64,000 bases of DNA, taken from positions 161,896 through 225,895 of the forward strand of contig NIVC01001881.1 in assembly GCA_002269645.1 (NCBI GenBank), in the 5' to 3' direction. Within the stretch, counting starts at the first letter, position 1. The number at the start of each line of letters is the position of its first letter. Positions 168 through 31,410 of this stretch are shown in pieces. The translations under genes and the position numbers were made by a program. A model generated the notes under the pieces. The model saw only the letters and a program-made list of their open reading frames with translations. It had not been told where the DNA came from and searched no databases. This DNA is from Macrostomum lignano (taxonomy: Eukaryota).

Positions 168-360
168 GTTTTTCTCAATCTGTCACTGTGAGATTTGCAA
201 GTGTGTCTCATTATGTCAGTGTGAGATTTCCAAGCTTGTCTCACTCTGTTAGGTGAGATTTCTAAGGAATCTGTCAGTTTCTAAGGCAGATATCCAATAC
301 TAACCCAATCTAATTGCGATGAGAGTTGATCCAGTCGAAAACCCGCAACCGATTTTTCAG

Positions 361-3300
361 CTGTCCTACGATGCCGCTCAGCTGAGCTGCGGCACTCTGC
401 TCTCAGTGGTGGAAGAAGTTTGCTCCGGCCGCAGCAGAAACGGTTACGCAATAGTCCGCCCGCCTGGGCATCACGCAGAATCCGACAAGCCTCGAGGCTT
501 CTGCTTCATCAACAATGTAGTGGTGGCGGCTCGTTACGCTCAGACTAAACATTCTAATAAAGTACGCCGCGTACTTATCCTAGACTGGGACGTGCATCAC
601 GGAAACGGAGTTCAAGACGCTTTCTATAGTGACGACTCTGTGCTGTACATCAGCCTGCACCGCTACGACTTTGGTCGCTTCTATCCTGGTAGTAGCGGCG
701 CTAAGGAGAATGTCGGCTGCGACAAAGGATTGGGGTACAATGTTAATGTGCCCTGGAATGTGAGTCAGTTCTAATGTTATGGTAGTGGGTCCGGATTCTG
801 GGTCAAGGGGTCCAGATTCAGGGTCAGTGAGTCTAGATTCTGGGTCAAGGGGCCAGATTCTGACTCAATGGGTCTAGATTCTGACTCAATGGGTCTAGAT
901 TCTGACTCAATGGGTCTAGATTCTGACTCAATGGGTCTAGATTCTGACTCAATGGGTCCAGATTCTGACTCAATGGGTCCAGATTCTGACTCAATGGATC
1001 TAGATTCTGACTCAATGTTTCTAGATTCTGACTCAATGGGTCCAGATTCTGGGTCAGTGAGTCTAGATTCTGGGTCAGTGAGTCTAGATTCTGGGTCAAG
1101 GGGCCAGATTCTAACTTAATGGGTCCAGATTCTGACTCAATGGGTCCAGATTCTGACTCAATGGGTCTAGATTCTGACTCAATGGGTCTAGATTCTGACT
1201 CAATGGGTCCGGATTCTGACTCAATGGGTCCAGATTCTGGGTCAGTGAGTCTAGATTCTGGGTCAAGGGGCCAGATTCTGACTCAATGGGTCTAGATTCT
1301 GGGTCAGTGAGTCTAGATTCTGGGTCAAGGGGCCAGATTCTGACTCAATGGGTCCAGATTCTGACTCAATGGGTCTAGATTCTGACTCAATGGGTCCAGA
1401 TTCTGGGTCAGTGAGTCTAGATTCTGACTCAATGGGTCCAGATTCTGACTCAATGGGTCCAGATTTTGACTCAATGGGTCTAGATTCTGACTCAATGGGT
1501 CCAGATTCTGGGTCAGTGAGTCTAGATTCTGGGTAAAGGGGTACAACTGGGTCAGTGGGATAACGATTTTGAGTAAATGAATCTAAATTCTGGGTCGGTG
1601 AGTCTAGATTCTAGGTCAATGGGTTGAGAGTGTAGGTCAATGGGTCCAGAATCTGGGTCGGTTAGTCCAGATTCTAGGTCAGTGGGATGGACGTTCTGGG
1701 TCGGTTAATCCAGATTCTGGGTCAGTGGGATTTAGATTCTGGGTCAGTGGGATTTAGATTCTGGGTCAGTGGGATTTAGATTCTGGGTCAGTGGGATTTA
1801 GATTCTGGGTCAGTGGGATTTAGATTCTGAGTCAGTGGGATTTAGATTCTGGGTCAGTTGAGATTCTGGGTCAGTGAGTCTATATTCTGGGTCAAGGGGT
1901 ACAACTTCTGGGTCAGTGGGATTTAGATTCTGTGTCAATAGATACAGATTCTGGGTCAGTAAGTCCAGATTCTGTGTCAGTGGGATTTGAGGTTCTGGAC
2001 CAGTGGGGATTAAGATTCTGGGTCACTCAATGAAAACCTCAGGATTCCAATGATCAATCATACAGTCACCCGTCCCAAGTTCAATTCTCAGCCTCAACTT
2101 TGCCCCCCCACCCACCTGCACTCTCAAATGCACAGGGCAGAGTCGGGGACGCCGAGTACTTGGCCGCTTTCCACCACATTGTGCTGCCAATTGCTCAGTC
2201 GTTCAATCCCGACCTGGTCCTGGTCTCCGCTGGCTTCGACGCAGCAGTTGGCGACCCGCTGGGCGGATTAAAGCTCACCCCTGCCTGCTACGGTCACCTG
2301 GCTCACCTGCTGTGCGGCCTGGCTGGTGGGCGGGTCGTGCTGGCGCTGGAGGGTGGCTACAATCTGGCGTCTATTGGCGAGGCCTCGTGCCATTGTGTGG
2401 CTTCTCTGCTGGGCCTGCCGCCCCTGCAGCTGCCCAAGCAGCTGGTGCCAAACGTTCAGTGAGCTGATGGGTTCTATTCGCATTCTATCCTGATTCTATT
2501 CGACTTCTATCCAGATTCTATTCGCATTCTATCCTGATTCTATTCGACTTCTATCCAGATTCTAATCGGGTTCTATCCAGATTCTATTCGACTTCTATCC
2601 AGATTCTATTCGCATTCTATCCAGATTCTAATTGGATTCTATCCAGATTCTATTCGACTTCTATCCAGATTCTATTCGCATTCTATCCAGATTCTAATCG
2701 GGTTCTATCCAGATTCTATTCGACTTCTATCAAGATTCTATTCGCATTCTATCCAGATTCTAATCGGGTTCTATCCAGATTCTATTCGACTTCTATCCAG
2801 ATTCTATTCGGATTCTATCCAGATTCTAATCGCATTCTCTCCAGATTCTAATCGGATTCTATCCAGATTCTGATTGGATTCTATCCAGATTCTACTCGGA
2901 TTCTATCCAGATTCTAGTCGGATTCTATCCAGATTCTAATTGGATTCTATCCAGATTCTACTCAGATTCTATCCAGATTCTAATCGGATTCTATCCAGAT
3001 TCTAATCGGATTCTATCCAGATTCTAATCTGATTCTATCCAGATTCACTCTCGTGTTCAATATACATTCGACCAGACGTATATTTGATTGATATTTATTA
3101 AATCCAATATTAAAACTTTTCAGTGGTGTCAGAGCAATCAGGGAAGTGATCGATATTCACAAGGCTTATTGGAAGCATCTTAAGTTTTCAGGTATGAGTT
3201 TTGCTTAAAATATTGTGAATAAAGGCATATTTTTGAGTTGCTAAATTTTAATTCCAGATGACATCCCGAACTGGGTGACCAGCCTGCCAGAGGATGCTAA

Positions 3301-4004
3301 TAGGTGAGAGGTTATTTTTTTGTTTTTTTATAGTCTAGCCACGCAGACATATGTACAATGCGTTTATTGGGTCTAGTAGCACAGATCCGCTTTTACGTTC
3401 ATTATTGTTCAGTTTAAAAGCATTGACGTATAGAATTAATACTGTGCAGACTAATATGTTTCATTAATTCCCTCTCGTAACCCCGTGCAGATCAGCTGAC
3501 AGCGTCAACACTTCGGTGGACCAGCTGGCCCGAGAACTCGACAATTTGGACGTTTCCGCCGCCGCAACGTCGGTGACAGACTTCATCGAAGCTTCTTCAA
3601 CTGCTGCTGCTGCTGCTGCTTCTGGCGGAGCTGTCGGCGGTTTTGAATTTCTTCTTCTAGAGGATCAGCAATTTTTTGCCGTTCATCCTCGATCGGATTG
3701 TCCTCACGTGATCCAGCCGAGTCACGTGACTCGCATAGCCGACGGTCGCGGAGTTGACGCTCGAGCAGTCTGTCAGACTTGCTCGGATGGCAGCGAGAAC
3801 TGGCTCTGCCTGGCCTGCCTGGAGACCCACTGCGGCAGGTACGTGTCTAAGCACATGCTGAGCCACAGCGAGTCTACTGGCCACGTCATCGCTCTGTCAT
3901 TTAGCGATCTGTCTGTGTGGTGCTACCACTGCGACTCGTACATTGTGTCGCCTGTGGTGGAGCCGTTCATTGCCGCGGCTGCCAGGTCCAAGTTTGGCGA
4001 ATAA
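361..4004 (+). CDS. HDAC6: Histone deacetylase 6, 3' part (second deacetylase domain + ZnF-UBP). Exons 361-759, 2136-2458, 3124-3191, 3258-3303, 3491-4004; 5' exons lie outside the window
   Basis: Motifs [22 protein letters not shown] and LEGGY, plus a C-terminal ZnF-UBP ([22 protein letters not shown]...VWCYHCDSY). All introns are GT-AG with matching phases (0,2,1,2). AATAAA at 4072-4077. Confidence 0.95.
787..2030. repeat. 21/22-bp minisatellite (AGATTCTGACTCAATGGGTCT grading into AGATTCTGGGTCAGTGGGATTT) in HDAC6 intron
   Basis: Tandem periodicity read directly from the sequence. Confidence 0.95.
2470..3046. repeat. 22-bp minisatellite (GATTCTATTCGACTTCTATCCA) in HDAC6 intron
   Basis: About 26 tandem copies. 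Confidence 0.95.
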
Positions 4005-4721: not shown

Positions 4722-5969
4722 TTAGTACAGATAGGCAGGTACAAGCCATTTTTTGTTCCTGAAGCCGTCGGAGAGCCACTTCTTGTTCCTGAAGCCGTCG
4801 GAGGGCCACTTCTTGTTCCTGAAGCCGTCGGAGAGCCACTTCTTGTTCCTGAAGCCGTCGGAGAGCCACTTCTTGTTCCTGAAGCCGTCGGAGAGCCACT
4901 TCTTGTTCCTGAAGCCGTCGGAGAGCCACTTCTTGTTCCTGAAGCCGTCGGAGAGCCACTTCTTGTTCCTGAAGCCGTCGGAGAGCCACTTCTTGTTCCT
5001 GAAGCCGTCGGAGAGCCACTTCTTGTTCCTGAAGCCGTCGGAGAGCCACTTCTTGTTCCTGAAGCCGTCGGAGAGCCACTTCTTGTTCCTGAAGCCGTCG
5101 GAGAGCCACTTCTTGTTCCTGAAGCCGTCGGAGAGCCACTTCTTGTTCCTGAAGCCGTCGGAGAGCCACTTCTTGTTCCTGAAGCCGTCGGAGAGCCACT
5201 TCTTGTTCCTGAAGCCGTCGGAGAGCCACTTCTTGTTCCTGAAGCCGTCGGAGAGCCATTTCTTGTTCCTGAAGCCGTCGGAGAGCCACTTCTTGTTCCT
5301 GAAGCCGTCGGAGAGCCACTTCTTGTTCCTGAAGCCATCGGAGAGCCATTTCTTGTTCCTGAAGCCATCGGAGCGCCACTTCTTGTTCCTGAAGCCATCG
5401 GAGAGCCATTTCTTGTTCCTGAAGCCATCGGAGAGCCACTTCTTGTTCCTGAAGCCATCGGAGAGCCACTTCTTGTTCCTAAAGCCATCGGAGAGCCATT
5501 TCTTGTTCCTAAAGCCATCGGAGAGCCACCTCTTGTTCCTGAAGCCGTCGGAGAGCCAATTCTTGTTCCTGAAGCCGTCGGAGAGCCACTTCTTGTTCCT
5601 GAAGCCGTCGGAGAGCCACTTCTTGTTCCTGAAGCCGTCGGAGAGCCACTTCTTGGTTTCTTGTCGATAGTCTGCCACCTCATGGACTCCGGTTACTCCA
5701 TCCTTGGTCTGTAAAAATGAAGTTGAAATTTAAATAGCACTTCAACCCAGAATGGCCATAAATTTCTATAACTGTCTAAATCGAATTTCGCACTTACGAT
5801 GTCACCTGAGGCCCCGTCGACAGAAGCAGTTGAGAATGCAAGAACTGAAAATGGTAATGATGCGAATCAAGCAACGTGAAACTTCATTAAACCTTGGAAT
5901 AAGCAAATACGAGCGATGTGCCATGATGCACATACCACAAGCGGCAACAAGCCAAGCAGTTGGTCGCAT
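4722..5969 (-). CDS. Putative neuropeptide precursor (~355 aa): signal peptide + 30 x KK-WLSDGFRN. Exons 5969-5936, 5844-5798, 5708-4722
   Basis: Spliced N-terminus MRPTAWLVAACVLAFSTASVDGASGDI|TKDGVTGVHEVADYRQETKKWLSDGFRN.... Donors GTATGT and GTAAGT with phase-matched acceptors. Most repeat variants are synonymous in this frame (GAC/GAT, TTC/TTT, AAG/AAA). Minus-strand AATAAA at 4562-4567. Confidence 0.85.
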
Positions 5970-9368: not shown

Positions 9369-11848
9369 ATGGCGGAAACGAGTGAATGGCGGGAGGACAT
9401 GCGAGATACATTCAACATGTTCGACAAGAACGGAAATGGAGAAATCGAAGTGAACGAGCTGAGAACCGTTATCCAGTGCCTGGGACAGAATCCCACCGAG
9501 AAGGACGTACAGGTAAGAATCAGATAGAACATGATTAGGGTCGAGGGATGAGAAGAATATTGACTGCTAAGGATAGAAAAGATATTCGTACAAAGTAAAG
9601 ATAGTGAGACAATTAGGGTGGATGAGTGTGGTAAATGGTATGGTACTAGAGTAAAAAAACTCGGCGTGTGGTAAATAGTATGGGAGTGCGGTAAAGACTA
9701 GGCGGAGTTTTAAAGATTAGGGGGTGTAGTAAATAGTAAGAGTGGGGTAAGAATGACAATAAATGCATTTCCAAAGTGAGATTATTACACAGCCGTGTTT
9801 GCAACATAAAATTTTAATGCTTTTCTGCAGCTGATGATTCAAGAGTACGACCTAAACAAGGATGGTACAATCAATTTTGAGGAATTCTGCCAGGTGGGTG
9901 ATGTATTGTCAGTCACTCAAACATGTTTATGATAATCTGATTATTAATAATTTAATAATTTTTATTCAATCAATAAAAATCAACTCCAGATGATGAAAAA
10001 TCGAATCAAAACGGTCGAGTCCAAGCAGAACGAAATGAAGGTGGCGTTTCAGATGTTCGACAAAAATGGCGATGGGTGAGGGCTCGATCAGGTGTACTTA
10101 CCGCTTTCTGATGCATTGTTAAGTACAGGTCGCCATCGGGGGGGGACCCGATGGGTCATGTCCCTCTCACAGTAAAAGCTTTTGGGTAGACTGCAATGCT
10201 TTGTCACCTCCACCTAATTGTGACCCGTTGTGAGGAAATCAAAAGTTTTTCTTCAGGGCGCCAAATTGAGTGCCTGCCTGCGCGCCAAAATGAGTGCCTG
10301 CCTGCGCGCCAAAATGAGTGCCTGCGCGCCAAAATGAGTGCCTGCCTGCGCGCCAAAATGAGTGCCTGCAGCGCCAAAATGAGTGTCTGCCTGCGCGCCA
10401 AAATGAGTGCCTGCCTGCGCGCCAAAATGAGTGCCTGCAGCGCCAAAATGAGTGTCTGCCTGCGCGCCAAAATGAGTGCCTGCCTGCGCGCCAAAATGAG
10501 TGCCTGCCTGCGCGCCAAAATGAGTGCCTGCAGCGCCAAAATGAGTGTCTGCCTGCGGCGCCAAAATGAGTGCCTGCCTGTGGCGCCAAAATGAGTGCCT
10601 GCCTGCGGCGCCAAAATGAGTGCCTGCAGCGCCAAAATGAGTGTCTGCCTGCGGCGCCAAAATGAGTGCCTGCCTGTGGCGCCAAAATGAGTGCCTGCCT
10701 GCGGCGCCAAAATGAGTGCCTGCAGCGCCAAAATGAGTGCCCGCCTGCGGCGCCAAAATTAGTGCCTGCCTGCGGCGCCAAAATGAGCGCCTGCAGCGCC
10801 AAAATGAGTGCCCTGCCTGCGATGCCAAAATGAGTGCCTGCGGCGCCAAAATGAGTGCCCTGCCTGCGGTGCCAAAATGAGTGCCTGCGATGCCAAAATG
10901 AGTGCCCTGCCTGCGGCGCCAAAATGAGTGCCTGCAGCGCCAAAATGAGTGCCTGCAGCGCCAAAATGAGTGCCTGCGATGCCAAAATGAGTGCCCTGCC
11001 TGCGGCGCCAAAATGAGTGCCTGCAGCGCCAAAATGAGTGCCTGCAGCGCCAAAATGAGTGCCTGCGGCGCCAAAATGAGTGCCTGCAGCGCCAAAATGA
11101 GTGCCTGCAGCGCCAAAATGAGTGCCTGCGGCGCCAAAATGAGTGCCTGCCTGCAGCGCCAAAATGAGTGCCTGCAGCGCCAAAATGAGTGTCTGCCTGC
11201 GGCGCCAAAATGAGTGCCTGCCTGTGGCGCCAAAATGAGTGCCTGCCTGCGGCGCCAAAATGAGTGCCTGCAGCGCCAAAATGAGTGCCCGCCTGCGGCG
11301 CCAAAATAAGTGCCTGCCTGCGGCGCCAAAATGAGCGCCTGCAGCGCCAAAATGAGTGCCCTGCCTGCGATGCCAAAATGAGTGCCTGCGGCGCCAAAAT
11401 GAGTGCCCTGCCTGCGGTGCCAAAATGAGTGCCTGCGATGCCAAAATGAGTGCCCTGCCTGCGATGCCAAAATGAGTGCCTGCGATGCCAAAATGAGTGC
11501 CTTCGATGCCAAAATGAGTGCCTGCCTGCGATGCCAAAATGAGTGCCCTGCCTGCGGTGCCTAAATGAGTGCCTGCGGCGCCAAAATGAGCGAACAACGC
11601 CAATTCTCAGAATATTGTACATGTAGGAATAGTCATGTAGAATGCTTGCTGTCCCCCCCCCCTACAATAAAATCCATGCGACAAAAAACTCCAGGAAAAT
11701 CAGCAGCAACGAGCTGATGGAGGTGATGACGAAACTCGGCGAGAAGCTGACCATGGACGAAGTCAAAGAGATGATTACCGAGGTTGACGTTAACAACGAC
11801 GGGTTCATCGACTATGGAGAGTTCGTGCAGATGTACGCGACCAACTAG
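9369..11848 (+). CDS. Calmodulin-like protein, 148 aa, four EF-hands. Exons 9369-9512, 9831-9893, 9990-10075, 11695-11848
   Basis: Canonical loops [36 protein letters not shown] and [16 protein letters not shown] introns in phases 0,0,2. Too divergent to be canonical calmodulin. Confidence 0.92.
10257..11590. repeat. Variable 20-25-bp minisatellite (GCCAAAATGAGTGCC[TGCC/CTGCC]TGC) in calmodulin-like intron 3
   Basis: More than 50 units of mixed length, which breaks any reading frame. Confidence 0.95.
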
Positions 11849-12315
11849 AGCCGGAGAAGCTATTGTTATTTGTTACTGTTGAATCAGATCGTAGTTTATA
11901 AATTGCTAACTTTTTACTAAACGGCTATATACTTTTCAGCTATACAAAATCTAAATAAATGCGCGTCTATATCTATATAAACTTGGCTCTAGCGCTGCTA
12001 CTTAATTTATCAAAATGTTTAACTCAAACACAGAGAGCATTTTTCATTACTTCGAGCGTTTTAACTTGGGATGCAAAGTGTAACACCGGTAGGAAATAAC
12101 CAGGAGCAAGCAGTGCATGACTGCATGACTATATTTGAATTTAAGATCAGAGTCTTCTGTTTATGTTGTCGACATTTTCAGGCTGGCTAAGGCCTGTAAG
12201 ATTGGGAAAATAATCGAGGCGTAAAACGCGGTGGTTTGTTTGCTTTGGTTTTTGCTTTGATTGTTTTCCGTGTGGAAAAGAAGAGGCTTGAATAATTGCG
12301 CGTTAGGGTGCTGTA

Positions 12316-12511
12316 TATTTATATTCGTGTTAATAGAACATTCCGGAATCCGGAAAGTTCGAGAAGCAGTTTCTAGAAAGGTGTGCGCGGGAGTTCAAAA
12401 TACAAATATAGAAAGTGAGTGTTTACGCGGAAGTTTCTAGAATACAAGTATTGTACTGTACGCTATCTTATACCGTATACGCGCGTTGTTTAGTTGGAGA
12501 ACTTTCCAGAA
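12316..12511 (-). promoter_or_regulatory. Heat-shock-element cluster with TATA box
   Basis: GAAnnTTCnnGAA at 12336-12348, 12353-12365, 12430-12442 and 12499-12511. TATAAATA on the minus strand at 12316-12323. Confidence 0.75.
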
Positions 12512-13197
12512 TATTAAGATTTAAGCATGTTATGGAATATTATAGAAAATACAAATACGCTACAATAGTTATAATATAGTGAATACGCTACAGGCCTACA
12601 TGTATAGCTTGTTGGAAAAGGGGGTGATAATGTAGGACAAAAGTCCCGACTTCAAACGATGATAGCTGAGCCATGCAGTTATGGTGTCGCATATTGTATT
12701 TTTGATTTAAAATGATTATTGACAATTCATAAAACTGAGTAAGCATTTCGGGATTAGAAATTAAAGGTTGTTGCGACTCAGACCTCAGTTCTCAACAGAT
12801 CGATGGCTAATCAAAGAAATTTATAATTGAAATCTATTTGGTGTTTAAAATGGAATTTGCAATGCAATTTATGCAATAAATTATGCAATATACTACACAT
12901 TCAATTTATAGTAGAAAAACAACTGTCGATTTTAATAGTTGAAAATGTTATAAAAATGAAAAAGGTTAAGAAATGAAAATTTACGTATTACGTTAGTTTT
13001 AAGTCGAGTTAAGGGGAAAGTTTGTCTTACACTTTGTTATCCAATGAATATGCAGTTGGATTCGTGTTAGATTAACGTAGGAATACTGCAGGCTTGATAA
13101 ATATAGCTGGGATGAATTATGATTAAAACATTAACGGCAGCAAAAACCATGTTTGTTAGAGAAAAATATGGTTGAGAATCTGATCTTTCAAAACCTG

Positions 13198-15459
13198 TCA
13201 AATATACATCATCATCTTGATGAAGTTGTCCTGCTCCAAAGCCTCCTTTGTCTTCACAGTCGCTTCGTAGGTAGTAAAAGCGGTCCTCATTCGCACCGAT
13301 AGCAGGATGAAATCCTCGAAGCTCACGACGCCCTTAGTTGGGTCCGTATACCGCATGGCAACCGTCTCGAACACCTTGTTGCTCAGATTGTAGCCGGCAG
13401 CTTTCAAAGCGTCGCGCAGCTCGAACGAGTCAAATGAGCCATTTCCATCGGCGTCTTTCTCTTTGAAAATTGTCTTTAGCAGGCGGATCTGGTTCCAAAG
13501 CACTTTGAACTCGTCGAATTCCATGTAGCCGGACATGTTCAGGTCCATCAGAGCAAGCATGCTGCGACAGGCTTCGGCGCTGAATCCGGAAAACTCCTTC
13601 ACCTCTTTGCCGAAGGATCTGTTCAAGATCTGCTGCAGCTGGAATGCGTGAATTCGACCCGCGCCGCCGGAGAAGCCCTGGAAGGCTTTGCGCAACGGTT
13701 CCTCGTTCTCCGGTGCGCTGACGGGGGCGGCGATGGCCGGACTGACCTCCATCTTTGTCTCCGAGTCCAGCACAGCCGCGAGGTTCGGCTTTTCGGAGAA
13801 CATGCGCAGTATGAATTGCGCCTCCTCGTTCGGATTAAAGGTAGAGGGCACGATCACGTATCGACCCGGGGGTAGCTTGTGCCGGCCGCTCACCTCGCGT
13901 TGATTTACAAACGCCGACTTATCCGTCTGTTTGTTATAGCGGAAGAACTTCTGGTCAAGGGGGCTGTCATTATGGCCTCTCAGCTGGTAAATAGCATAGC
14001 CAATGGTGAAATATTCGCCGCCAACTGTGATCTTGCGCACGTCCTTCTGCATTAGGCCGACAATAATGGTGCCCAGATTTTCATCGTCTTCTTCATCCGG
14101 GTCGACAATCTCCACGCGGAACTGCTGATTAGTGTGGAAGCTGTCAATGAAGTTCCTGCAGCCGCCGGCGCTCACGTTCTTCTTCCACTCGCCCTTCTCT
14201 ATGCTGATCTCCCAGCGGCGCTTCTTGGCGGCGGCGCCCTTCACAGTGCCGGACATGGTCTCTGGGCACAGGTGGCAAATCTCCAGTTTAGTGAACTCCT
14301 GGACAAAGTCTTTGAAGGCCATCCAGAACTCGCCATCATCGCTGGCGTCCATTTTCAGCCGGGATTTCTCATCCGCGTTGACTTGGTTCCACAGGGGGCT
14401 CCGGTCGCTCCAGTCGCCCTTCCACTCGCACTCGTTGCCCCACGGGTTGCGAACCCGGACTAGCGATTCTTCCTGGCCGTTTTTCAGTTTGCAATTTCTG
14501 ACGTCAGTCACAGAGTAAGCGTGTCCAGTGATCAGGCCGTTATCTAGTTCGCCCTCAATCTCCTCGCTCTCAATGCTGCATCCCATTAGAGACTCGCTTT
14601 TGTTGGCCTGAAACATCACGTTAAACAAGTCGGCCGGTGCCTTGTTGAGATCAAAGTTTTCGCACAGGCCGCCGGTGAAGTCCTCCATAGCCTCGGACTG
14701 GCTCCCACCTGTCAGGGCCTCATAGCTACCGTTGACTTTAGCGTAGGCTTTCTCTAGTAGGGCCGACCAGAACTCGTTGCGATCCTGGCTGCGCATGAAG
14801 CAGAGCCGCCCCGCCTTAGTAGGCAGCCGATCATCGACAACCACCTCTTTCCAGCGGCCAAAGTGCCAAAACCGGAAACGGAACATTCCGCAATAGCCTG
14901 CGTCGAAATCCTGACCGGGAGGAACCACTCGGTCGAATAAACTTTTGTTCATAGAAAGGGAAGCAATTGAAGCCAGTAGCCAACAATCGCCCAGTTCTCC
15001 TTGTTTAACATCGAACCGGCTGACACCATCGCTAATAAACATTGGCGATTGGCAGATTTCTTTCGGCCGCTTCCACACATACCTCTGATTAGGCCTCGAA
15101 GGAAAAATGCTGCGACCCTCTGCTGGAAATTTGGGATCCTCGTACAATTGCTTGGATTGAATCAGATTCTTTCTCAGCTCCTCAAAGTCTAGCTTTTTTA
15201 CAACTGCATCTTGCAAATTTCCAGTGGAGGCGGCGACTAAAGCACGAGGTGATTTGTTAGCAGATCCGATGGCGGGTTTGAGTGCGTCCTGTTGCCGAGA
15301 TTGCGGCTGTTGCGGCGGCTGTTGTTGCGACGGCGCCGGCTGCTGCGGCCTCGGCTGAGCCTGGCTTGAAGCTGTTACAGTAGCTGGACTCGCAGCAGAT
15401 TGCGTCTTCGAGTCGTTGCTGGTGTTCAGGTACTCGCGAACAATCTTGACGCGTGACAT
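13198..15459 (-). CDS. Classical calpain (CysPc protease core, C2-like domain III, penta-EF-hand), 753 aa, single coding exon
   Basis: QGELGDCWLLA (Cys), GHAYSV (His), RVRNPWG (Asn), GGCRNF domain III motif, C-terminal EF-hands, Q/P-rich N-terminal extension. Confidence 0.96.
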   Translation of the reverse strand: MSRVKIVREYLNTSNDSKTQSAASPATVTASSQAQPRPQQPAPSQQQPPQQPQSRQQDALKPAIGSANKSPRALVAASTGNLQDAVVKKLDFEELRKNLIQSKQLYEDPKFPAEGRSIFPSRPNQRYVWKRPKEICQSPMFISDGVSRFDVKQGELGDCWLLASIASLSMNKSLFDRVVPPGQDFDAGYCGMFRFRFWHFGRWKEVVVDDRLPTKAGRLCFMRSQDRNEFWSALLEKAYAKVNGSYEALTGGSQSEAMEDFTGGLCENFDLNKAPADLFNVMFQANKSESLMGCSIESEEIEGELDNGLITGHAYSVTDVRNCKLKNGQEESLVRVRNPWGNECEWKGDWSDRSPLWNQVNADEKSRLKMDASDDGEFWMAFKDFVQEFTKLEICHLCPETMSGTVKGAAAKKRRWEISIEKGEWKKNVSAGGCRNFIDSFHTNQQFRVEIVDPDEEDDENLGTIIVGLMQKDVRKITVGGEYFTIGYAIYQLRGHNDSPLDQKFFRYNKQTDKSAFVNQREVSGRHKLPPGRYVIVPSTFNPNEEAQFILRMFSEKPNLAAVLDSETKMEVSPAIAAPVSAPENEEPLRKAFQGFSGGAGRIHAFQLQQILNRSFGKEVKEFSGFSAEACRSMLALMDLNMSGYMEFDEFKVLWNQIRLLKTIFKEKDADGNGSFDSFELRDALKAAGYNLSNKVFETVAMRYTDPTKGVVSFEDFILLSVRMRTAFTTYEATVKTKEALEQDNFIKMMMYI

Positions 15460-18480: not shown

Positions 18481-21400
18481 ACAGGGTTCAGCACGCCTGT
18501 GTAGCATGAGACAGACCAGGCCTACGAGTTAAGGTCTGCGATCCTACACACCTGCACCCCCTCTATTCTGGTGCAGGAATGGCAGAACTCTCTCCAAGCT
18601 GACGATCACAAGCCGACCCAGGGGTTCACGCCCCGCATGTGTTCAAGGCAGCTCTAGGGCTGCTGGACTGACTGGGCTCCGGCGGCGGCAACCCATCCGT
18701 GGCCAGCTGGCCAATTTGGGTACGGGCCCCGCCCGGAAGTGAACCTGTGCGTATCAGGTACCTCTGGCCACGGCTCTGAGGAACAGGTATCACCCTCTGA
18801 CTTTAACAGGGTATGCGGCCAGTCCGCAGGCTCCGGGGACAGCCTCTTGTCCCCCTCAAGTGTTAGCACCGCGCTGATGGTCCTTTGGTTCGGCCTCTGG
18901 TTTTTCCAAGCCGGGCTCTTAGCCGGGGAGTTTCTCGGTTGCTAGCGGTCGGGCCGGTAAGGGCTTAAGCCACCCCCCGGTCGCTACCTCTTGGCCTGGC
19001 TGTTGGGTTTGGGGTTACGGCCCAGCGGCTTCTCACCTCAGATAGTCCCTAGGCCTTTCAGCGACTCATGGAGTATTCATTTACTTCCGACACGTCTGAA
19101 GCTGCTGGAGTACCAACCGAGGTTGGTACCGCGGCCCAGCCGGACATTCGCAACACCGGAACCCCCAGTGCCTCTCAGTCAGCCCCTGCCGCCGCTCAGG
19201 ATAATACCGGAGTGGCTGGACAAGACAGCGGACCTCAGATTTCTAAAAAGAAGGCCCGTAGCATTGCTCGCTACAAAGCTTTTCTCCAACGCAAAGCGGA
19301 GGAACGGAGGAATGCGAAAGCCGCCCCTCCGGCCGCCTCCGAGGAGGGTGCCGGTAACTCTGCGAACCCCGCGGAGGAGCCGACATCCGACAAGGGGGTG
19401 GACCCCGCGCGCCGGTCTGATGCGTCAGGTGCCGCCGAAGCTCCTGGTGCGGCTGGCCCCTCTCGTGACGGGACCTCTGCCCGTGTGGAAGCTCCCACGG
19501 CCGTGGAGGGATCCAAAGCGGGGGGTGCTGGCCAAACCACCGAGCCAAAGTGCACCTATGCGGCTATGGCCAAGAGGCAGCCGGCCCTGATTATCCAAGG
19601 CCAGGAGACGCCTCTTAAGGCCGAACAGCTCGACCTACTCTGGCGCAGGTCGGACTCCCACCTGGTCTAGATGGCCTTGAGTGGTACCGCTATTCAAGTC
19701 CAAAAGACGAAAGTCGAGGACCAAGCCCTCCATATCCAGCCCGCCGACAGTCAGTCGGGACAGCAGCTCCTCGAGATGCTGAAAGCATTCGACTGGGGTA
19801 CGGAGTTGAAAAACCTGTTTATCTATAAGGAGGACGAGCGACCCCGGACACACCGGCACCGTGCCTGGATTCCGGCTCGCAGCTGCATCACCAAGGCCGA
19901 CGAGCTGCGTCGCCTGCTAGTGGCTACCAACCCGGAGCTACCGGCAAACGGTGTCGTAGTTCACGAGACCATCTCCAAGCCGGGCGGAGACGGTTTCACG
20001 GCTATTCTTGGACTGTCGGATAGCTGGATGCTCCGCTATCCGGACATGTCCATCATCTCTGTCGGGCTGATGCAGATTCAGCTCTTTAGCTTTGAGTCTG
20101 ACGCCACCCGCCCACCGCCCCCGGAGAAGCGTAAGCGGGCAGTCGGGGGCTCTGCCAGGCAGAAACGCCCAGGAAAAGAAGCTCCCGTTCGTCTCGACCC
20201 CTCCGAGGACGTGGACCCTGTCAGAGGGAAAGCCGCGAAAGCTGCAGCAACAGGCGGACGTGGAAAGGGCCGGAAACCCCTCCCCCCCCGGAACACTATC
20301 CGCTCTGGTCTGACTCAGCGCGCGAAGCAGCTGCTGGGCACCGCCAGGGCCAACAACCGCAGCAACCCCCAGCCCAGTGTCACCACTGCGCCCCCCTGGA
20401 AAACCGGGCCGAGAGCGAGAATGCCGCCCTTGTGGTGGCCCCGCCCTCGACCATGGAGACCATCCGGGAGGAGCCCATGGAACTGGAGCCTGGAGCTATC
20501 GACTAGGCAGAAGAGACAGCTCTCCTGCACAACTCGCCCTGAACCGGCAGGAAGCTGCGCGGACCACTCGTGGAATCCCCAGAGTGGACATCCTGCAGCT
20601 AAATCTACACCACTGCATCGCGGCCTCGACCAACCTGATGCAGGTGGCAAACTTTGTAAAACCTTCTCCAGGAGCCCTGGACGAAGAAAGGTAAGATCCC
20701 GAATATTCCTACTGGTTTTGACTGTTTTCAGGACCCCCAAAACCCCAGAGCAGCCATGTTTGTGTCTATCCATCTCAAAGCTTGGCACAGACCGGACCTC
20801 TCTGACAGAGACCTCTGTGCCATTCGGTCCAACCACATTATCACCAACCGCACGGTCATCATCGCCTCGATTTATATCCCTGGCGATGGCCCCGCGGTTC
20901 CACCCAACCTCACCTCCCTCGTGGACTACTGTTCTAACCGTAGGTTCGAGCTGCTGGTGGCGGGCGACGTCAACGCCCACCACGCCCACCAAACCCACTG
21001 GGGCAGTAATACCTCCAACAGCAGAGGCGAGGAACTCCTTGCTTACATCTGCACCACCAACACTGAGTTTTGCAACATTGGTGGAACCCCCACTTTGACA
21101 ACTGGCGTTGGACGGAGGCCCTCGACGTTACCCTCGTCTCCCATGGCTTGGCTCCTTTAGTCAAGGACTGGGAGGTGTGGGACGAAGAGGAGTCTCTGTC
21201 TGACCATCGCTTCGTTTGTTTTCGATTGCAATCCTCTTGCCCCAAGCCTCACATCCTGTGGAAAAGTAACGTTCGGAACACTGACTGGACGGCTTTTCGC
21301 GGAAACCCTGAAATGTCAGACAGATCAGCTGACCAATGCCGCTCAAACCACCTGTCAGGAAGTGGATGACCTTGCAGACTTGATCAGCAAGACCGTCCTG

Positions 21401-23372: not shown

Positions 23373-24086
23373 TCACGCGTCAGCGGCTACTTCTAATATA
23401 AATAACAATAATCTACCTAATCGAACCAATAACTGGTATAACAATGAACCTAGTGTTTCTGATTGACCATTATTATCATTGTTATTATTATCCGATTGCG
23501 ACGTGAATATAGACTTTTGCCTGCGACTGTCAAAAGCTCCGCTCATAAAATCATCATAGTCGTCTACAGAGCCGCCAGACTGCGACTCAATTTGATTTCG
23601 AATCCGACTGTACTCATCTAACAGTGTATCGTGTTTATACAACTCCAATAAGAAGGTGGAATTATCGCTACTCTGAGGCGAAGCGTAGATCAACACGGAT
23701 ATTGGCGGCTTTAATTCTTCCGGCACAAACACCAAGTCAAGTGAGAAGTTCTCACTTTTGAGGTCATAATCGTCTGGCGTGGGGGACCGACCGTAGCTGG
23801 ATACGTAAATATCAGCATCGCCGACATCTGATCGAAGCACAAATAACAGAGGCGGCTGATAATCAAATCTGAACAAGTAGCCTTTGCCGCTATCTAAATT
23901 GCCGTTGTGTTGCCGAACTAATCGACCAGTATTGAGCAGGTATTGAGCAAAGCCCTCCGTCATTATGTAAGTGGCCGCGGCGCAACCAACGCTTATAGAT
24001 AATACAGCAACGATCAGTATAGAAATTATTGGAAGAAGAAAAAGCAGCGACAAAGGCTGCCAGGACAATAGACGCCCAAGCCGCAT
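23373..24086 (-). CDS. C6orf120: UPF0669 / C6orf120 homolog, 237 aa, single coding exon
   Basis: Hydrophobic N-terminus. LRSDVGDADIYVS..PTPDDYDLKS resembles the recalled vertebrate MRSLKGDADLYVS..PSFDDYELQS. C-terminal SLLYQLLVRLGRLLLFILEV helix. Confidence 0.85.
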   Translation of the reverse strand: MRLGRLLSWQPLSLLFLLPIISILIVAVLSISVGCAAATYIMTEGFAQYLLNTGRLVRQHNGNLDSGKGYLFRFDYQPPLLFVLRSDVGDADIYVSSYGRSPTPDDYDLKSENFSLDLVFVPEELKPPISVLIYASPQSSDNSTFLLELYKHDTLLDEYSRIRNQIESQSGGSVDDYDDFMSGAFDSRRQKSIFTSQSDNNNNDNNGQSETLGSLLYQLLVRLGRLLLFILEVAADA

Positions 24087-26828: not shown

Positions 26829-29800
26829 TCAGTCTTCCAGTCGCACAAACACCTTAGGCCTTGAGAACACTTTGACAGCTTCGTCAAGCTCAGCCAATTG
26901 ACGCTCCAATTCCACTCGACGCTGGCGCGCTCGAAGAGTGTCAGCCGTGATTGGCAGCCGGTTGACTTCGCTAAGCAGCTGGGCCTGTACAGCGAGTGAT
27001 TGACAATTTTAATAAATAAAAGTGCCGAATTCAATGTAAATACTCTAATTGAATCTTCTAATTAGACAATCGAAATACTACTGGACTAGAAAGCAAACTT
27101 TAAGGTTACTCTAATCGAAACTAATCAACTCAAAACTACTCAACCTCAAATCTGCTCAAATCAAGGCTACTGAACTCAGGCTACTAAACTAAAATCTGTT
27201 CAATCAAGTACTGAACTAAGCTACCTAGCTCGTAAAGCTAGTACAACACGAAAGCTATTCAAAGGTACTCCAACTAAAGCCTACTAACTAAAGCTACTAA
27301 CTAAAGGCTACTAAACTCAAAGCTACTAACTAAAAGCTACTCAACTAAAGCTACTAACTAAAAGCTACTAGAGGTCACGGAGTACTAAATAAGCTAGATA
27401 AAGGTCACGAAGTACTAAATAAGCTACATAAAGATCATGAAGTACTAAATAAGAGCTACATAAAAGTCACGGAGTACTAAATAAGCTACATAAAGGTCAC
27501 GAAGTACTAAATAAGCTAGATAAAGGTCACGAAGTTCTAAATAAGCTACATAAGGGTCACGGAGTACTAAATAAGCTACATAAAGTTCACGGAGTACTAA
27601 ATAAGCTACATAAAGGTCACGGAGTACTAAATAAGCTACATAAAGGTCACGAAGTACTAAATAAGCTAGATAAAGGTCACGAAGTACTAAATAAGCTACA
27701 TAAGGGTCACGGAGTACTAAATAAGCTACATAAGGGTCACGGAGTACTAAATAAGCTACATAAAGGTCACGGAGTACTAAATAAGCTACATAAAGTTCAC
27801 GAAGTACTAAAAGCCTATCTAAAGTTCATGAAGTACTAAATAAGCTACCTAAAGTTCATGGAGTACTAAAACGCCATCCTAAACAAGCCTTACCGTCAGC
27901 TTATGCTCCGGTGCAGTTCTAGGAAACGGCGCCACAGGATGATCGTCAAGCGCCGGATTTGGGCCAGTTTTCTCGTGCGCTCTCAAATAAGCGCCACGAC
28001 TGGATGGCCGGTCGGTCCGCTGACGATCCGAGGCCGCACCATCTGCCCGATAGCGATACCTGTCCGGCACATCTGTATAAACTCGCGACGCTACGTGGGC
28101 AAATTTGGAATCTCGTTGTTGCAAGGAATCCCGGCCAGTGTCCAAACATCCGCTCTCAGAGCCCCTGCGGCTGCGTGCGTGCGCGCTGTTTGATCGCAAT
28201 CGGCGAATATTTTCTCGAACAAAATCTCGCGACGAATCCGAAGTTGGGGGCGGACTGACTGCGATTTTTAGTGGGTTGAAAAATAACTTTAGATTAGGCT
28301 GCATGGATCTGTGTGTGCTAGCTACCCTAACCATGGGATCTGTGTGTGCTAGCTACCCTAACCATAGGATCTGTGTGTGCTAGCTACCCTAACCATGGGA
28401 TCTGTGTGTGCTAGCTACCCTAACCATGGGATCTGTGTGTGTGCTAGCTACCCTAACCATGGGATCTGTGTGTGTGCTAGCTACCCTAACCATGGGATCT
28501 GTGTGTGTGCTAGCTACCCTAACCATGGGATCTGTGTGTGTGCTAGCTACCCTAACCATGGGATCTGTGTGTGCTAGCTACCCTTACCGTGGGATCTGTG
28601 TGTGCTAGCTACCCTAACCATAGGATCTGTGTGTGCTAGCTACCCTAACCATAGGATCTGTGTGTGCTAGCTACCCTAACTATAGGATCTGTGTGTGTGC
28701 TAGCTACCCTAACCATGGGATCTGTGTGTGTGCTAGCTACCCTAACCATGGGATCTGTGTGTGTGCTAGCTACCCTAACCATGGGATCTGTGTGTGTGCT
28801 AGCTACCCTAACCATGGGATCTGTGTGTGCTAGCTACCCTTACCGTGGGATCTGTGTGTGCTAGCTACCCTAACCATAGGATCTGTGTGTGCTAGCTACC
28901 CTAACCATGGGATCTGTGTGTGCTAGCTACCCTAACCATGGGATCTGTGTGTGTGCTAGCTACCCTAACCATGGGATCTGTGTGTGTGCTAGCTACCCTA
29001 ACCATGGGATCTGTGTGTGCTAGCTACCCTTACCGTGGGATCTGTGTGTGCTAGCTACCCTAACCATAGGATCTGTGTGTGCTAGCTACCCTAACCATAG
29101 GATCTGTGTGTGTGCTAGCTACCCTAACCATGGGATCTGTGTGTGCTAGCTACCCTTACCGTGGGATCTGTGTGTGCTAGCTACCCTAACCATAGGATCT
29201 GTGTGTGCTAGCTACCCTAACCATGGGATCTGTGTGTGCTAGCTACCCTTACCGTGGGATCTGTGTGTGCTAGCTACCCTAACCATAGGATCTGTGTGTG
29301 CTAGCTACCCTAACCATGGGATCTGTGTGTGTGCTAGCTACCCTAACCATGGGATCTGTGTGTGCTAGCTACCCTAACCATGGATCTGTGTGTGTGCTAG
29401 CTACCCTAACCATGGATCTGTGTGTGCTAGCTACCCTTACCGTGGGATCTGTGTGTGCTAGCTACCCTAACCATAGGATCTGTGTGTGCTAGCTACCCTA
29501 ACCATAGGATCTGTGTGTGTGCTAGCTACCCTAACCATGGGATCTGTGTGTGTGCTAGCTACCCTAACCATGGGATCTGTGTGTGTGCTAGCTACCCTAA
29601 CCATGGATCTGTGTGTGTGCTAGCTACCCTAACCATGGGATCTGTGTGTGTGCTAGCTACCCTAACCATGGATCTGTGTGTGTGCTAGCTACCCTAACCA
29701 TGGGATCTGTGTGTGTGCTAGCTACCCTAACCATGGGATCTGTGTGTGTGCTAGCTACCCTAACCATGGGATCTGTGTGTGTGCTAGCTACCCTAATCAT

Positions 29801-30139
29801 GGGATCTCTCTGTGTGTGTGTGCTAGCTACCCTAATCATGGGATCTGTGTGTGTGTGTGTGCTAGCTACCCTAACCATGGGATGTGTGCTAGCTACCCTA
29901 AACATTAGATTTATGATGAATAACTATTCTACTTAAAAAATATACAATAAAGCATTACCTTGCCGACCCCATGGCAAACCAGAAGCAGTGGCATTGGCGG
30001 CAGCAGCATCAGCAGCAGCTGCTATCCTGCGTATGCGAGCACTTCGGGCCTGACTATCAAGGTCAGCATTGATTTCATAGAGTGTATGAGCTGGTATTGG
30101 GCCAGATATGCCAGATGCGACCCAGCCACTCGAGGACAT
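26829..30139 (-). CDS. ENKD1: Enkurin domain-containing protein 1. Exons 30139-29959, 28258-27894, 26984-26829 (233 aa; central part apparently absent)
   Basis: ISGPIP, DFVRENIRRLR, SKFAHVASRV, YLRAHEKTGP and C-terminal LPITADTLRARQRRVELERQLAELDEAVKVFSRPKVFVRLED match recalled ENKD1 motifs. GT-AG introns in phases 1 and 0. Confidence 0.88.
27370..27870. repeat. 30-bp minisatellite (ATAAGCTACATAAAGGTCACGGAGTACTAA) in ENKD1 intron
   Basis: About 16 tandem copies. Confidence 0.95.
28305..29900. repeat. 31/33-bp minisatellite (GGATCTGTGTGT[GT]GCTAGCTACCCTAACCATG) in ENKD1 intron
   Basis: About 50 tandem copies with variable GT number. Confidence 0.95.
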
Positions 30140-30334
30140 TGCTGAAGTAGAGATCTATAGGTTAATACATAACACAATAGAAGATTTATAAATCAAAGAG
30201 GCTGAGATGAGATGTTTTGATATTTTTCTTTGACTAAAATTCTCAAAAGTTTAGGTCAAAGGGTATGTGTAGATATAAGGGCTAAAAGCAAAAGGATCTA
30301 GATTCCAGACAAGAATTTACTAGTATGATAAATA

Positions 30335-30612
30335 TAATAATAATTATTATTGATTACAACTGCCCCAATGGGGCCAGTTTTGCAGCCGACAGCTAAAAAG
30401 ACTACATATGGCTATTCAGTCCAAGGACTGGGGTCCCATGCACACCCTTAATCACCCCACCTATTGCTTTACCCATTTTACAGCTAGGTGAACTGAAGCA
30501 ATGCAGAGTTAAGTGTCTTGCTTAAGGGCACAAATTGTTTCTAGCGGGATTGGGAATTGAACCCCTTAATCATCAAGTTGCAAGTCCAATGCTATAACCA
30601 CTAAGGCACTAA
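30335..30612 (-). mobile_element. tRNA-derived CORE-type SINE
   Basis: Minus strand: A-box-like TAGTGGTTATAGCATTGG, B-box GGTTCAATTCC, CORE-like CCTTAAGCAAGACACTTAACTCTG..TCAGTT..CTGTAAAATGGG, (TAA)n-like tail. Confidence 0.75.
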
Positions 30613-31231
30613 GCTATAACTGTAGAGATTCATTCCTTCAGAAATGCTACTATAAGTAGAGTAAACCAAACATGTGCAGCAAAACTAAAAAATGATTTTA
30701 TGTTACCATTCAATAATGAAAGAGATTGATAATGATTACCTTTTACAGGGTAAACAATGAATTATGACCCCAACAAGGGTAAATGATATTCCCACTCCTA
30801 CCATATTTACTAGAATTATTTTTAACTGTCAGTTAAATTCCTAAGATTGAACCATTTCAGTCTATCAAATTAAACAAGAATAAACCAGTTTTTGTAAAAC
30901 TTTACTGTAGAATACCAGCACATCTCTAAAATAAATATGCGCTATTAGAAAAGCCTTCTAAATATCTTTGTTCTTTGGTCATTAAGAGCTATGTTATTAT
31001 TAGTGGTTGTTGATCAAGTGATTTCTATTGAGTTATTTAATTAAAGGTCTCCTTTTTTATTAGAGGCAGGGGGGTTGTGTGCACCCTGGCGCACTTTAAG
31101 TGACATAGGCACACAATCGGCAAAAGGCATTACTGCCCATTCTGCCGACTCCCCTGAGCAGGCACAAAAGTGCACGGATACATATGCAGGCACACACTCA
31201 CACAGTAGTGTACAGCAACTCTAGCTTTATA

Positions 31232-31410
31232 TTATTATTAGGCATGTACACTTCACTGCGCCTTGGGGGGTTGGCTCTCAAGGCCATTAATTGCACGAGC
31301 GGAGCCAAGCTGAGATTTCAATTCAGCCCCAAATTAATGTGACTGCACTTGGAATTGAGCCTGGGTTGCTGGCACACCAGAGCAGTTGCGCTACTGCTGG
31401 GCTATAGCCC
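31232..31410 (-). mobile_element. Second tRNA-derived SINE family
   Basis: Minus strand starts GGGCTATAGCCCAGCAGTAG, has GGCTCAATTCC (B-box-like) and ends in TAATAATAAT. Confidence 0.65.

What the first reader, a model, noticed from the sequence alone, without database searches (positions are those of the whole stretch)
12161..12511. Orphan heat-shock promoter aimed antisense at the calmodulin-like gene
Seen: four perfect GAAnnTTCnnGAA triplets within 176 bp, a TATAAATA 13 bp from the nearest one on the minus strand, an A-rich leader (AAAGCAAAAACCAAAGCAAACAAACC), then AAAATG-TCG-ACA-ACA-TAA (12175-12161). No HSP coding sequence follows, and the site lies between two convergent 3' ends. Established: clustered HSEs next to a TATA box is the HSF-inducible hsp promoter layout. 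Inference: this is either the relic promoter of a deleted or relocated hsp gene, or a heat-inducible lncRNA promoter whose transcript would run antisense into the calmodulin-like gene about 200-300 bp away.
Basis: partly seen in the sequence, partly recalled or inferred. Interest (0 to 1): 0.72.

Follow-up and report, generated by a model that had tools for sequence, protein, structure and literature searches.

The report
Solo retrotransposon LTR with heat-shock elements
The "orphan heat-shock promoter" is real, but it is most likely the leftover long terminal repeat of a heat-activated retrotransposon of the flatworm Macrostomum lignano, a kind of element published in 2025, and not the remains of a lost heat-shock gene.

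Summary
Four perfect GAAnnTTCnnGAA elements lie at 12336-12511. They are the only four in 64 kb (0.85 expected). A TATAAATA sits 12 nt downstream on the minus strand, followed by an A-rich leader.

The window is Macrostomum lignano contig NIVC01001881.1. The site lies between the convergent 3' ends of an intronless calpain gene and a calmodulin-like gene.

The decisive result comes from a second, diverged copy of the locus on NIVC01000084.1. It aligns on both sides but lacks one sharply bounded block. That block is 398 bp (window 12195-12592, sense on the minus strand). It starts TGTAGCG and ends CTTACA, and it is flanked by a 4-bp direct repeat, GGCC. It holds all four elements, the TATA box and the leader. 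This is the anatomy of a solo LTR.

Ustyantsev et al. (Mob DNA 2025) showed, on this same assembly, that M. lignano LTR retrotransposon families carry one to four canonical heat-shock elements upstream of the LTR TATA box. Four families are induced more than 250-fold by heat, and for the tested Mag LTR the induction depends on those elements. Four elements per LTR occur only in the CsRN1-clade families. That clade's hallmarks, a 4-bp target duplication and TGT...ACA ends, match this block.

I could not verify the family, because no other copy was reachable with these tools. The ATG-TCG-ACA-ACA-TAA mini-ORF is flank DNA and unrelated. Heat-induced antisense read-through into the calmodulin-like gene is plausible but untested.

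The parts
12195..12592 (-). Solo LTR, 398 bp: 5'-TGTAGCG...CTTACA-3' (TGT...ACA terminal inverted repeat). Equals NIVC01001881.1:174090-174487.
   Evidence: Block absent from the diverged second copy L002, whose flanks align on both sides. Sequence and ends. An identical copy sits in the redundant contig L003.
12593..12596 (.). 5' copy of the 4-bp target-site duplication, GGCC
   Evidence: L002 has a single GACC at the empty site.
12191..12194 (.). 3' copy of the 4-bp target-site duplication, GGCC
12499..12511 (-). Heat-shock element 1 (distal), TTCTGGAAAGTTC, LTR positions 82-94
12430..12442 (-). Heat-shock element 2, TTCTAGAAACTTC, LTR positions 151-163
12371..12378 (-). Two-unit partial element, TTCTAGAA, LTR positions 215-222
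12353..12365 (-). Heat-shock element 3, TTCTCGAACTTTC, LTR positions 228-240
12336..12348 (-). Heat-shock element 4 (proximal), TTCCGGAATGTTC, LTR positions 245-257
12316..12323 (-). TATA box, TATAAATA, LTR positions 270-277, marking the 3' end of U3
   Evidence: The 10-mer ATAAATATAC is shared with the experimentally validated Mag ID206 LTR promoter.
12285..12295 (-). Predicted transcription start region (CAAGCC motif about 30 nt downstream of the TATA box). Inferred, not measured.
   Evidence: Spacing from the TATA box. The same CAAGCC(C/T)CT..CTTTT string lies at the same offset in the ID206 LTR.
12195..12284 (-). Presumed R-U5 part of the LTR, including the A-rich leader at 12233-12258. 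Contains no AATAAA.
12597..12604 (.). Unexplained 8-bp palindrome, TACATGTA, between the conserved flank and the 5' duplication copy. Absent from L002.

Best explanation
The block at window 12195-12592 (minus strand) is a solo LTR. A solo LTR is what remains after the two LTRs of an inserted LTR retrotransposon recombine. The parent most likely belonged to a CsRN1-clade Ty3/Mdg4 family of Macrostomum lignano, whose LTRs carry canonical heat-shock elements.

Shown:
- It is a discrete insertion-type block with LTR termini and a 4-bp target duplication.
- Its U3 part holds four perfect heat-shock elements and one partial element directly upstream of a TATA box.

Inferred mechanism:
- On heat stress, HSF trimers bind the elements and drive Pol II initiation about 30 nt downstream of the TATA box, near 12290 on the minus strand.
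- No internal retrotransposon sequence is left, and no canonical poly(A) hexamer follows for about 2.3 kb.
- The transcript would therefore run out of the LTR into the intergenic DNA, antisense to the 3' UTR and last exon of the calmodulin-like gene.

It is a by-product of a transposon's own heat-activation strategy, not a host heat-shock gene remnant.
For: (1) Species and locus. The calpain next door is 99% identical to an M. lignano protein, and the window maps to GCA_002269645.1 contig NIVC01001881.1.

(2) Presence or absence. The second copy of the locus (L002, NIVC01000084.1; intergenic identity 86-91%) aligns on both sides but lacks exactly this block. It has no perfect heat-shock element anywhere in its 22 kb. 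The redundant contig L003 carries an identical copy.

(3) Ends. The block runs TGTAGCG...CTTACA and is flanked by GGCC/GGCC.

(4) Layout. Elements, then TATA, then about 100 nt of leader, in U3-R-U5 order.

(5) Literature, on the same assembly. LTR-RT families of the Mag, CsRN1 and Gmr1 clades carry 1-4 canonical HSEs upstream of the LTR start site. Four families are induced more than 250-fold. Mutating the HSEs of the Mag LTR abolishes its induction. Solo LTRs of these families exist (PMC12801592). Four HSEs per LTR occur only in CsRN1 families (preprint Table S1).

(6) CsRn1-clade hallmarks. TSD is always 4 bp, ends are TGT...ACA, and LTRs are 146-381 bp in that paper (PMC2582038). The clade's end motifs are 5' TGTGGYG and 3' MSYYAMA; this block matches 6/7 at each end (PMC3601003).

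(7) Core promoter. The stretch from TATA to +47 aligns with the validated ID206 LTR promoter, score 15 against shuffles of 9.0 +/- 1.4, reached by 3 of 1000.
Against: - No second copy of the 398-bp sequence was found in any sequence I could reach: the window plus four loci, about 120 kb.
- There is no canonical AATAAA in the LTR.
- The left junction is not clean. An extra 8-bp palindrome, TACATGTA, is absent from L002. An alternative boundary with TACA as the duplication can be drawn.
- A 4-bp repeat at both ends could in principle also mediate a deletion in L002, and no outgroup was available. The 69%-identical calpain paralogue is not syntenic.
- The LTR is not homologous to the one published LTR sequence, Mag ID206, outside the core promoter.
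- Heat induction of this particular copy has not been measured.
Confidence: 0.8

Rival explanations
1. Relic promoter of a host hsp gene whose coding part was deleted or relocated.
For: The layout of heat-shock elements, TATA box and A-rich leader is the classic hsp promoter layout. No coding sequence follows.
Against: The promoter is a sharply bounded 398-bp block with TGT...ACA ends and a 4-bp duplication, and it is absent from the second copy of the locus. No HSP-like coding remnant lies on either side. The flank immediately after the block, including the mini-ORF, is conserved in the copy that lacks the promoter.
Confidence: 0.03
2. A host-evolved heat-inducible lncRNA or antisense promoter, not derived from a transposon.
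For: It points at the calmodulin-like gene's 3' end. No canonical poly(A) hexamer occurs on the minus strand until 9966.
Against: It is not conserved between the two copies of the locus. It has insertion hallmarks. No Rfam family matches.
Confidence: 0.03
3. The indel is real but is not an LTR. It could be another kind of mobile or captured fragment, such as a non-autonomous element or a promoter fragment pasted in by repair. Or it could be ancestral DNA that L002 lost by microhomology-mediated deletion between the two GGCC repeats.
For: Only one genomic site (two redundant contigs) was seen. The left junction has an unexplained 8-bp extra. There is no AATAAA and no outgroup.
Against: TGT...ACA ends directly abutting the 4-bp repeat, the size, and the U3-R-U5-like promoter placement all fit an LTR and the CsRN1 end motifs. 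The species is documented to have exactly such LTRs.
Confidence: 0.1
4. Chance cluster of GAA/TTC motifs with no promoter meaning.
For: None beyond the fact that activity of this copy has not been measured.
Against: Four perfect 13-mers fall within 176 bp, against 0.85 expected in 64 kb. They sit next to a TATA box, and the core-promoter stretch matches a validated heat-inducible LTR.
Confidence: 0.01

Closest known systems
Heat-activated CsRN1-clade LTR retrotransposon families of M. lignano (Mlig-id55, four HSEs; Mlig-id36, two HSEs; preprint lineages ID2677/ID979/ID2465). Ustyantsev et al., Mob DNA 2025, PMC12801592.
   Same: Same species and assembly. Canonical heat-shock elements upstream of a TATA box inside an LTR. 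The count of four elements matches. The 4-bp target duplication and TGT...ACA ends fit the CsRN1 clade. Solo LTRs of these families are reported.
   Different: Here only the LTR is left, with no gag-pol. Sequence identity to the family consensus could not be checked. The published qPCR primer for the CsRN1 family shares only a 9-mer with this LTR, which is not significant.
Mlig-id115 / ID206 Mag LTR promoter, the experimentally validated heat sensor (KU60 reporter)
   Same: Heat-shock elements of the TTCTAGAAnnTTC type, the ATAAATATAC TATA box, and a CAAGCC..CTTTT string about 30 nt downstream. In that LTR, induction depends on the elements.
   Different: It belongs to a different family. The rest of the LTR does not align: local score 25 against shuffles of 18 +/- 2.3. 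It has three elements rather than four, and its 5' end is TGTTGTG (Mag type) against TGTAGCG here.
ONSEN (ATCOPIA78) of Arabidopsis and other Brassicaceae
   Same: An LTR retrotransposon that placed HSF-binding elements in its LTR and is transcribed on heat stress. Its LTRs can confer heat responsiveness on neighbouring DNA.
   Different: It is a Ty1/Copia element of plants and an independent, convergent origin (as stated in PMC12801592).
Helitron1_CE of C. elegans
   Same: A transposon that spreads heat-shock elements through the genome and is HSF-dependent (cited).
   Different: It is a rolling-circle DNA transposon with no LTR.
Host hsp gene promoters (e.g. Mlig-hsp20, Drosophila hsp70)
   Same: Arrays of nGAAn units close to a TATA box, followed by an A-rich, unstructured leader.
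   Different: No hsp coding sequence follows. The block is bounded by LTR termini and a target duplication. It is absent from the second copy of the locus.

Membership tests
Solo LTR of an LTR retrotransposon | Terminal short inverted repeat 5'-TG...CA-3' (usually TGT...ACA) | tested here: met
   TGTAGCG...CTTACA.
Solo LTR of an LTR retrotransposon | Flanking target-site duplication of 4-6 bp | tested here: met
   GGCC at 12593-12596 and 12191-12194, with a single GACC in L002. Caveat: an extra 8-bp palindrome at the left junction, and an alternative TACA reading.
Solo LTR of an LTR retrotransposon | An empty site exists in a related locus (insertion polymorphism) | tested here: met
   L002 aligns on both sides and lacks the block. 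The direction, insertion versus deletion, is not fixed by an outgroup.
Solo LTR of an LTR retrotransposon | U3-R-U5 organisation with an internal promoter and a polyadenylation signal | tested here: inconclusive
   The TATA box at LTR 270-277, with about 100 nt downstream, fits U3/R-U5. There is no AATAAA or ATTAAA in the LTR. The published ID206 LTR fragment also shows none.
Solo LTR of an LTR retrotransposon | Other genomic copies, including direct-repeat pairs flanking gag-pol with PBS and PPT | not testable with these tools
   No copy in the window or in L001-L004 other than the same locus. No RT/RNase H/protease motifs in those sequences. The six-frame peptide search and the metagenome scan were empty. 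The whole M. lignano assembly cannot be searched by DNA here.
CsRN1 clade (Ty3/Mdg4) | 4-bp TSD and TGT...ACA ends | tested here: met
   One search compared with PMC2582038.
CsRN1 clade (Ty3/Mdg4) | LTR end motifs 5' TGTGGYG and 3' MSYYAMA | tested here: inconclusive
   6/7 at each end. This is a better fit than the Mag A, Mag C, Sushi or rGmr1 motifs, but the motifs are short.
CsRN1 clade (Ty3/Mdg4) | tRNA-Trp primer-binding site, CHCC Gag motif, pol phylogeny | not testable with these tools
   A solo LTR keeps none of these.
Published heat-activated HSE-bearing LTR-RT families of M. lignano | Canonical nTTCnnGAAnnTTCn elements in the LTR upstream of the TATA box and start site | tested here: met
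   Four perfect elements by the same pattern the authors used.
Published heat-activated HSE-bearing LTR-RT families of M. lignano | At least 80% nucleotide identity to a family consensus | not testable with these tools
   The consensus sequences (Additional file 5) are not held. Against the only printed LTR, Mag ID206, there is no homology beyond the core promoter, so this is not that family.
Published heat-activated HSE-bearing LTR-RT families of M. lignano | Heat-induced transcription | not testable with these tools
   No expression data for this copy. The neighbouring calpain was not found in the stored part of the DE table. The one induced calpain listed there has different domain scores.
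Host heat-shock gene promoter | Drives an HSP coding sequence downstream | tested here: not met
   No HSP domain in any downstream minus-strand ORF. The 4-codon ORF is flank DNA shared with L002.
Host heat-shock gene promoter | Conserved at the paralogous or orthologous locus | tested here: not met
   Absent from L002.

The most novel reading that the evidence does not exclude
The solo LTR has been co-opted. On heat stress it fires a minus-strand transcript that runs antisense through the 3' UTR and last exon of the calmodulin-like gene. Alternatively, it acts as a heat-responsive enhancer on the calpain or calmodulin-like genes. Either way, this copy of the locus would respond to heat while the LTR-less second copy (L002) does not, a ready-made natural experiment on transposon-driven divergence between duplicated gene copies in a hidden polyploid.
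Probability: 0.12. Interest if true: 0.5.

Novelty: already known. Interest (0 to 1): 0.2.

Why it matters
It shows that a textbook-looking heat-shock promoter with no gene behind it can be transposon debris rather than a lost gene. This is useful for annotating this genome and any other genome with heat-shock-element-bearing transposons.

The kind of element was described for this species in 2025, so the finding adds one located instance with exact boundaries. It also adds a presence/absence contrast between the two copies of the locus. That contrast could be used to ask whether such solo LTRs rewire the heat response of neighbouring genes.

Tried and rejected
- **Other copies nearby.** I looked for other copies of the block in the window and in all fetched loci by BLASTN. 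Only the same locus came up.
- **Peptide search.** I concatenated all six-frame peptides of the LTR and searched 5.8 billion proteins, hoping that spurious gene calls on other LTR copies would lead to full-length elements. There were no hits.
- **Metagenome scan.** An exact 27-mer from the HSE3/HSE4-TATA region found nothing in JGI metagenome contigs.
- **Published Mag ID206 LTR.** Aligned against the only printed LTR, it is not homologous overall. Only the core promoter is similar.
- **Published qPCR and cloning primers.** Only a 9-mer (ACGCCTCGA) is shared with the CsRN1 forward primer. I estimate chance at about 0.08, so I did not use it as evidence.
- **Neighbouring genes in the preprint's differential-expression table.** The locus tags are absent. 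The one induced calpain has Peptidase_C2 at 264.8 bits against 409.6 here, so it is a different gene. The table is truncated in storage, so this allows no conclusion.
- **Outgroup.** The 69%-identical calpain paralogue is not syntenic.
- **Larger intron in L002.** I suspected a transposon in the larger calmodulin-like intron of L002. It is only a 56-bp minisatellite.
- **Local reverse transcriptase query.** RT, RNase H and protease motif scans of the window and loci, meant to yield a local pol query, found nothing.
- **Known RNAs.** Rfam and tRNA scans of the window found nothing.
- **Third protein search.** I left it unused. No query was available that would bring up M. lignano CsRN1 pol proteins, and I did not type any retroelement sequence from memory.

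Full report
**Observation**

The four perfect GAAnnTTCnnGAA elements lie at 12336-12348, 12353-12365, 12430-12442 and 12499-12511. They are the only perfect matches in the 64-kb window. Dinucleotide-preserving shuffles give 0.85 expected, and none of 100 shuffles reached four. A fifth, two-unit TTCTAGAA sits at 12371-12378.

On the minus strand a TATAAATA (12323-12316) follows the proximal element after 12 nt. Then comes an A-rich leader. The cluster is real and far beyond chance.

**Where we are**

The large intronless ORF to the right (13198-15459, minus) is a classical calpain, with Peptidase_C2 at 409.6 bits, Calpain_III and EF-hands. It is 99% identical to a Macrostomum lignano protein. 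An exact look-up places the window on contig NIVC01001881.1 of assembly GCA_002269645.1 (Mlig_3_7). Window position x corresponds to record position 161895 + x.

To the left is a 148-aa EF-hand (calmodulin-like) gene on the plus strand, at 9369-11848. Its intron holds a 1.3-kb minisatellite. The calpain gene has ATTAAA at 12936 on the minus strand. The calmodulin-like gene has AATAAA at 11954 on the plus strand.

**The decisive comparison**

The same assembly holds two more copies of this locus.
- L003 (NIVC01004423.1) is 99.9% identical over 1.6 kb, and identical across the block plus 40-45 nt of flank on each side. It is evidently a redundant or allelic contig.
- L002 (NIVC01000084.1) is a diverged second copy. 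Its calpain is 99% identical at protein level and its intergenic DNA is 86-91% identical. The species is described as a hidden allotetraploid.

In the alignment of L001 with L002 both flanks align well, but L002 lacks one contiguous block of about 410 bp. That block contains every heat-shock element, the TATA box and the leader. L002 has no perfect element anywhere in its 22 kb.

It is present in L002 as well, as ATGTCGACAACGTAA, so it is unrelated to the promoter.

**Anatomy of the block**

Read on the minus strand, the block is 398 bp (12592 down to 12195). It starts TGTAGCG and ends CTTACA, and it is flanked on both sides by GGCC. L002 has a single GACC at the corresponding point. TGT...ACA termini plus a 4-bp direct duplication are the signature of an LTR integrated by a retroelement integrase.

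Inside, the order is as follows.

| Feature | LTR position |
|---|---|
| Four heat-shock elements plus the partial one | 82-257 |
| TATA box | 270-277 |
| Start-site-like CAAGCC | about 30 nt after the TATA box |
| A-rich leader, running to the ACA end | about 95 nt |

This is a U3-R-U5 layout. No gag-pol remnant lies anywhere near, so it is a solo LTR.

**Literature**

Ustyantsev et al. (Mob DNA 2025, PMC12801592; preprint 10.1101/2024.12.18.629116) mined LTR retrotransposons in this same assembly. They found families of the Mag, CsRN1 and Gmr1/Osvaldo clades with one to four canonical elements in their LTRs, upstream of the start site. Four families are induced more than 250-fold at 37 C. 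Mutating the elements in the Mag (ID206 / Mlig-id115) LTR abolishes induction in a reporter. The authors also mention solo LTRs of these families near host genes.

Four elements per LTR are reported only for CsRN1 families: Mlig-id55, and preprint lineage ID2677 with a median of 4.

Independent descriptions of the CsRn1 clade state that the target duplication is always 4 bp and that the LTRs end TGT...ACA. LTRs are 146-381 bp in that paper (PMC2582038). A survey of LTR structure gives the CsRN1 end motifs as 5' TGTGGYG and 3' MSYYAMA (PMC3601003). The block has TGTAGCG and TCTTACA, 6/7 each. The published M. lignano Mag LTR starts TGTTGTG, which fits the Mag A motif and shows that these motifs carry over to this species.

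**Sequence comparison with the one printed LTR**

The Mag ID206 LTR promoter, taken from the preprint supplement, is not homologous to this block overall. The local score is 25 against 18 +/- 2.3 for shuffles, reached by 10 of 500. This is therefore not that family.

Restricted to the core promoter, the two share ATAAATATAC and a CAAGCC(C/T)CT..CTTTT string about 30 nt downstream. The score is 15 against 9.0 +/- 1.4, reached by 3 of 1000 shuffles. That supports the inferred start site and a common core-promoter design.

**What could not be done**

The tools give no DNA search of the M. lignano genome. I therefore could not show other copies, or a full-length parent with this LTR at both ends. 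The attempts all failed:
- local BLAST;
- a six-frame peptide search;
- a metagenome scan;
- motif scans for a local pol query.

Assignment to a CsRN1 family rests on the element count, the duplication length and the end motifs. It is an inference. I did not build, print or recall any full-length retroelement sequence.

**Weak points**

- The left junction carries an extra 8-bp palindrome, TACATGTA, that L002 lacks. It equals the LTR 3'-terminal TACA plus the LTR 5'-terminal TGTA.
- An alternative boundary with TACA as the duplication can be drawn, but it gives a non-canonical 3' end.
- The LTR has no AATAAA.
- No outgroup fixes insertion versus deletion, because the next calpain paralogue is not syntenic.

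**Mechanism (inferred)**

Heat activates HSF. Trimers bind the element array in U3, and Pol II starts near 12290 on the minus strand. Nothing of the retrotransposon remains downstream, and the first canonical poly(A) hexamer on that strand is at 9966. The transcript would therefore read through the flank, antisense to the calmodulin-like gene's 3' UTR (from about 11975) and last exon (11700-11848). Whether this happens, and whether it affects either neighbour, is untested. The accessible part of the published expression table does not resolve these genes.

**Verdict**

The proposed origins, a relic hsp gene or a dedicated host lncRNA, are not supported.

The best explanation is a solo LTR of a heat-activated retrotransposon, probably of the CsRN1 clade. 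This is a phenomenon already published for this species, so novelty and interest are low. The one feature worth a follow-up is the contrast between the LTR-bearing and LTR-less copies of the locus. It offers a natural test of whether such solo LTRs rewire neighbouring genes.

Noticed in passing
window 33662-34813 (-), within the AT-rich stretch ~30000-43000: A 383-aa ORF with a PIF/Harbinger-type DDE_Tnp_4 transposase domain (E 4e-33) plus HTH_Tnp_4, sitting in a 13-kb block of only 31-33% GC. Likely a DNA transposon copy.
   Followed up: partly
window 10257-11590; L002 13286-~18500: The intron of the calmodulin-like gene holds a 1.3-kb minisatellite (units of 21-25 or 47 bp). In the second copy of the locus the same intron carries an array of 56-bp period about 5 kb long, so the gene spans 6.9 kb instead of 2.5 kb.
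   Followed up: partly
window 12597-12604: An 8-bp palindrome, TACATGTA, lies between the conserved flank and the 5' target duplication of the solo LTR and is absent from L002. It reads like an LTR-end/LTR-start junction (TACA+TGTA). Also, the LTR 5' end TGTAGCGTATT recurs at LTR positions 29-39.
   Followed up: partly
window 19068-21098 (+): Two consecutive long ORFs (200 and 475 aa) in a 58% GC stretch, with no Pfam hit and no annotated gene. Possibly an ORF of an unclassified repeat or retroelement.
   Followed up: no
whole window (e.g. 786-1984, 4744-5655, 28310-29888, 44992-46327, 53510-56186, 59590-60919): Very high density of tandem repeats: 67 TRF rows, including many 15-34-bp minisatellites of 0.5-1.6 kb, a 2.7-kb (GATA)n and a 1.3-kb GA-rich tract.
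   Followed up: no
L003 5559-7379 versus window 13198-15459: The redundant contig NIVC01004423.1 is 99.9% identical at this locus, yet its calpain is annotated as 606 aa instead of 753 aa. This is an annotation or assembly discrepancy between redundant contigs.
   Followed up: no
literature sequences (preprint supplement; PMC6371448): The leader of the validated Mag ID206 LTR (...AATTCAACAACAGAACAATG) and the 5' UTR end of Mlig-hsp20, read from its cloning primer (...AGTCAACAACAGCATG), share TCAACAACAG just before the ATG. This could be a shared leader or start context, or a hint of promoter capture.
   Followed up: no
window 319-774, 3516-4004 (+); 23373-24086 (-); 44499-44978 (-): Other genes in the window: exons of an HDAC6-like gene (Hist_deacetyl, zf-UBP), a UPF0669/C6orf120-like gene, and a WSC-domain ORF.
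   Followed up: partly
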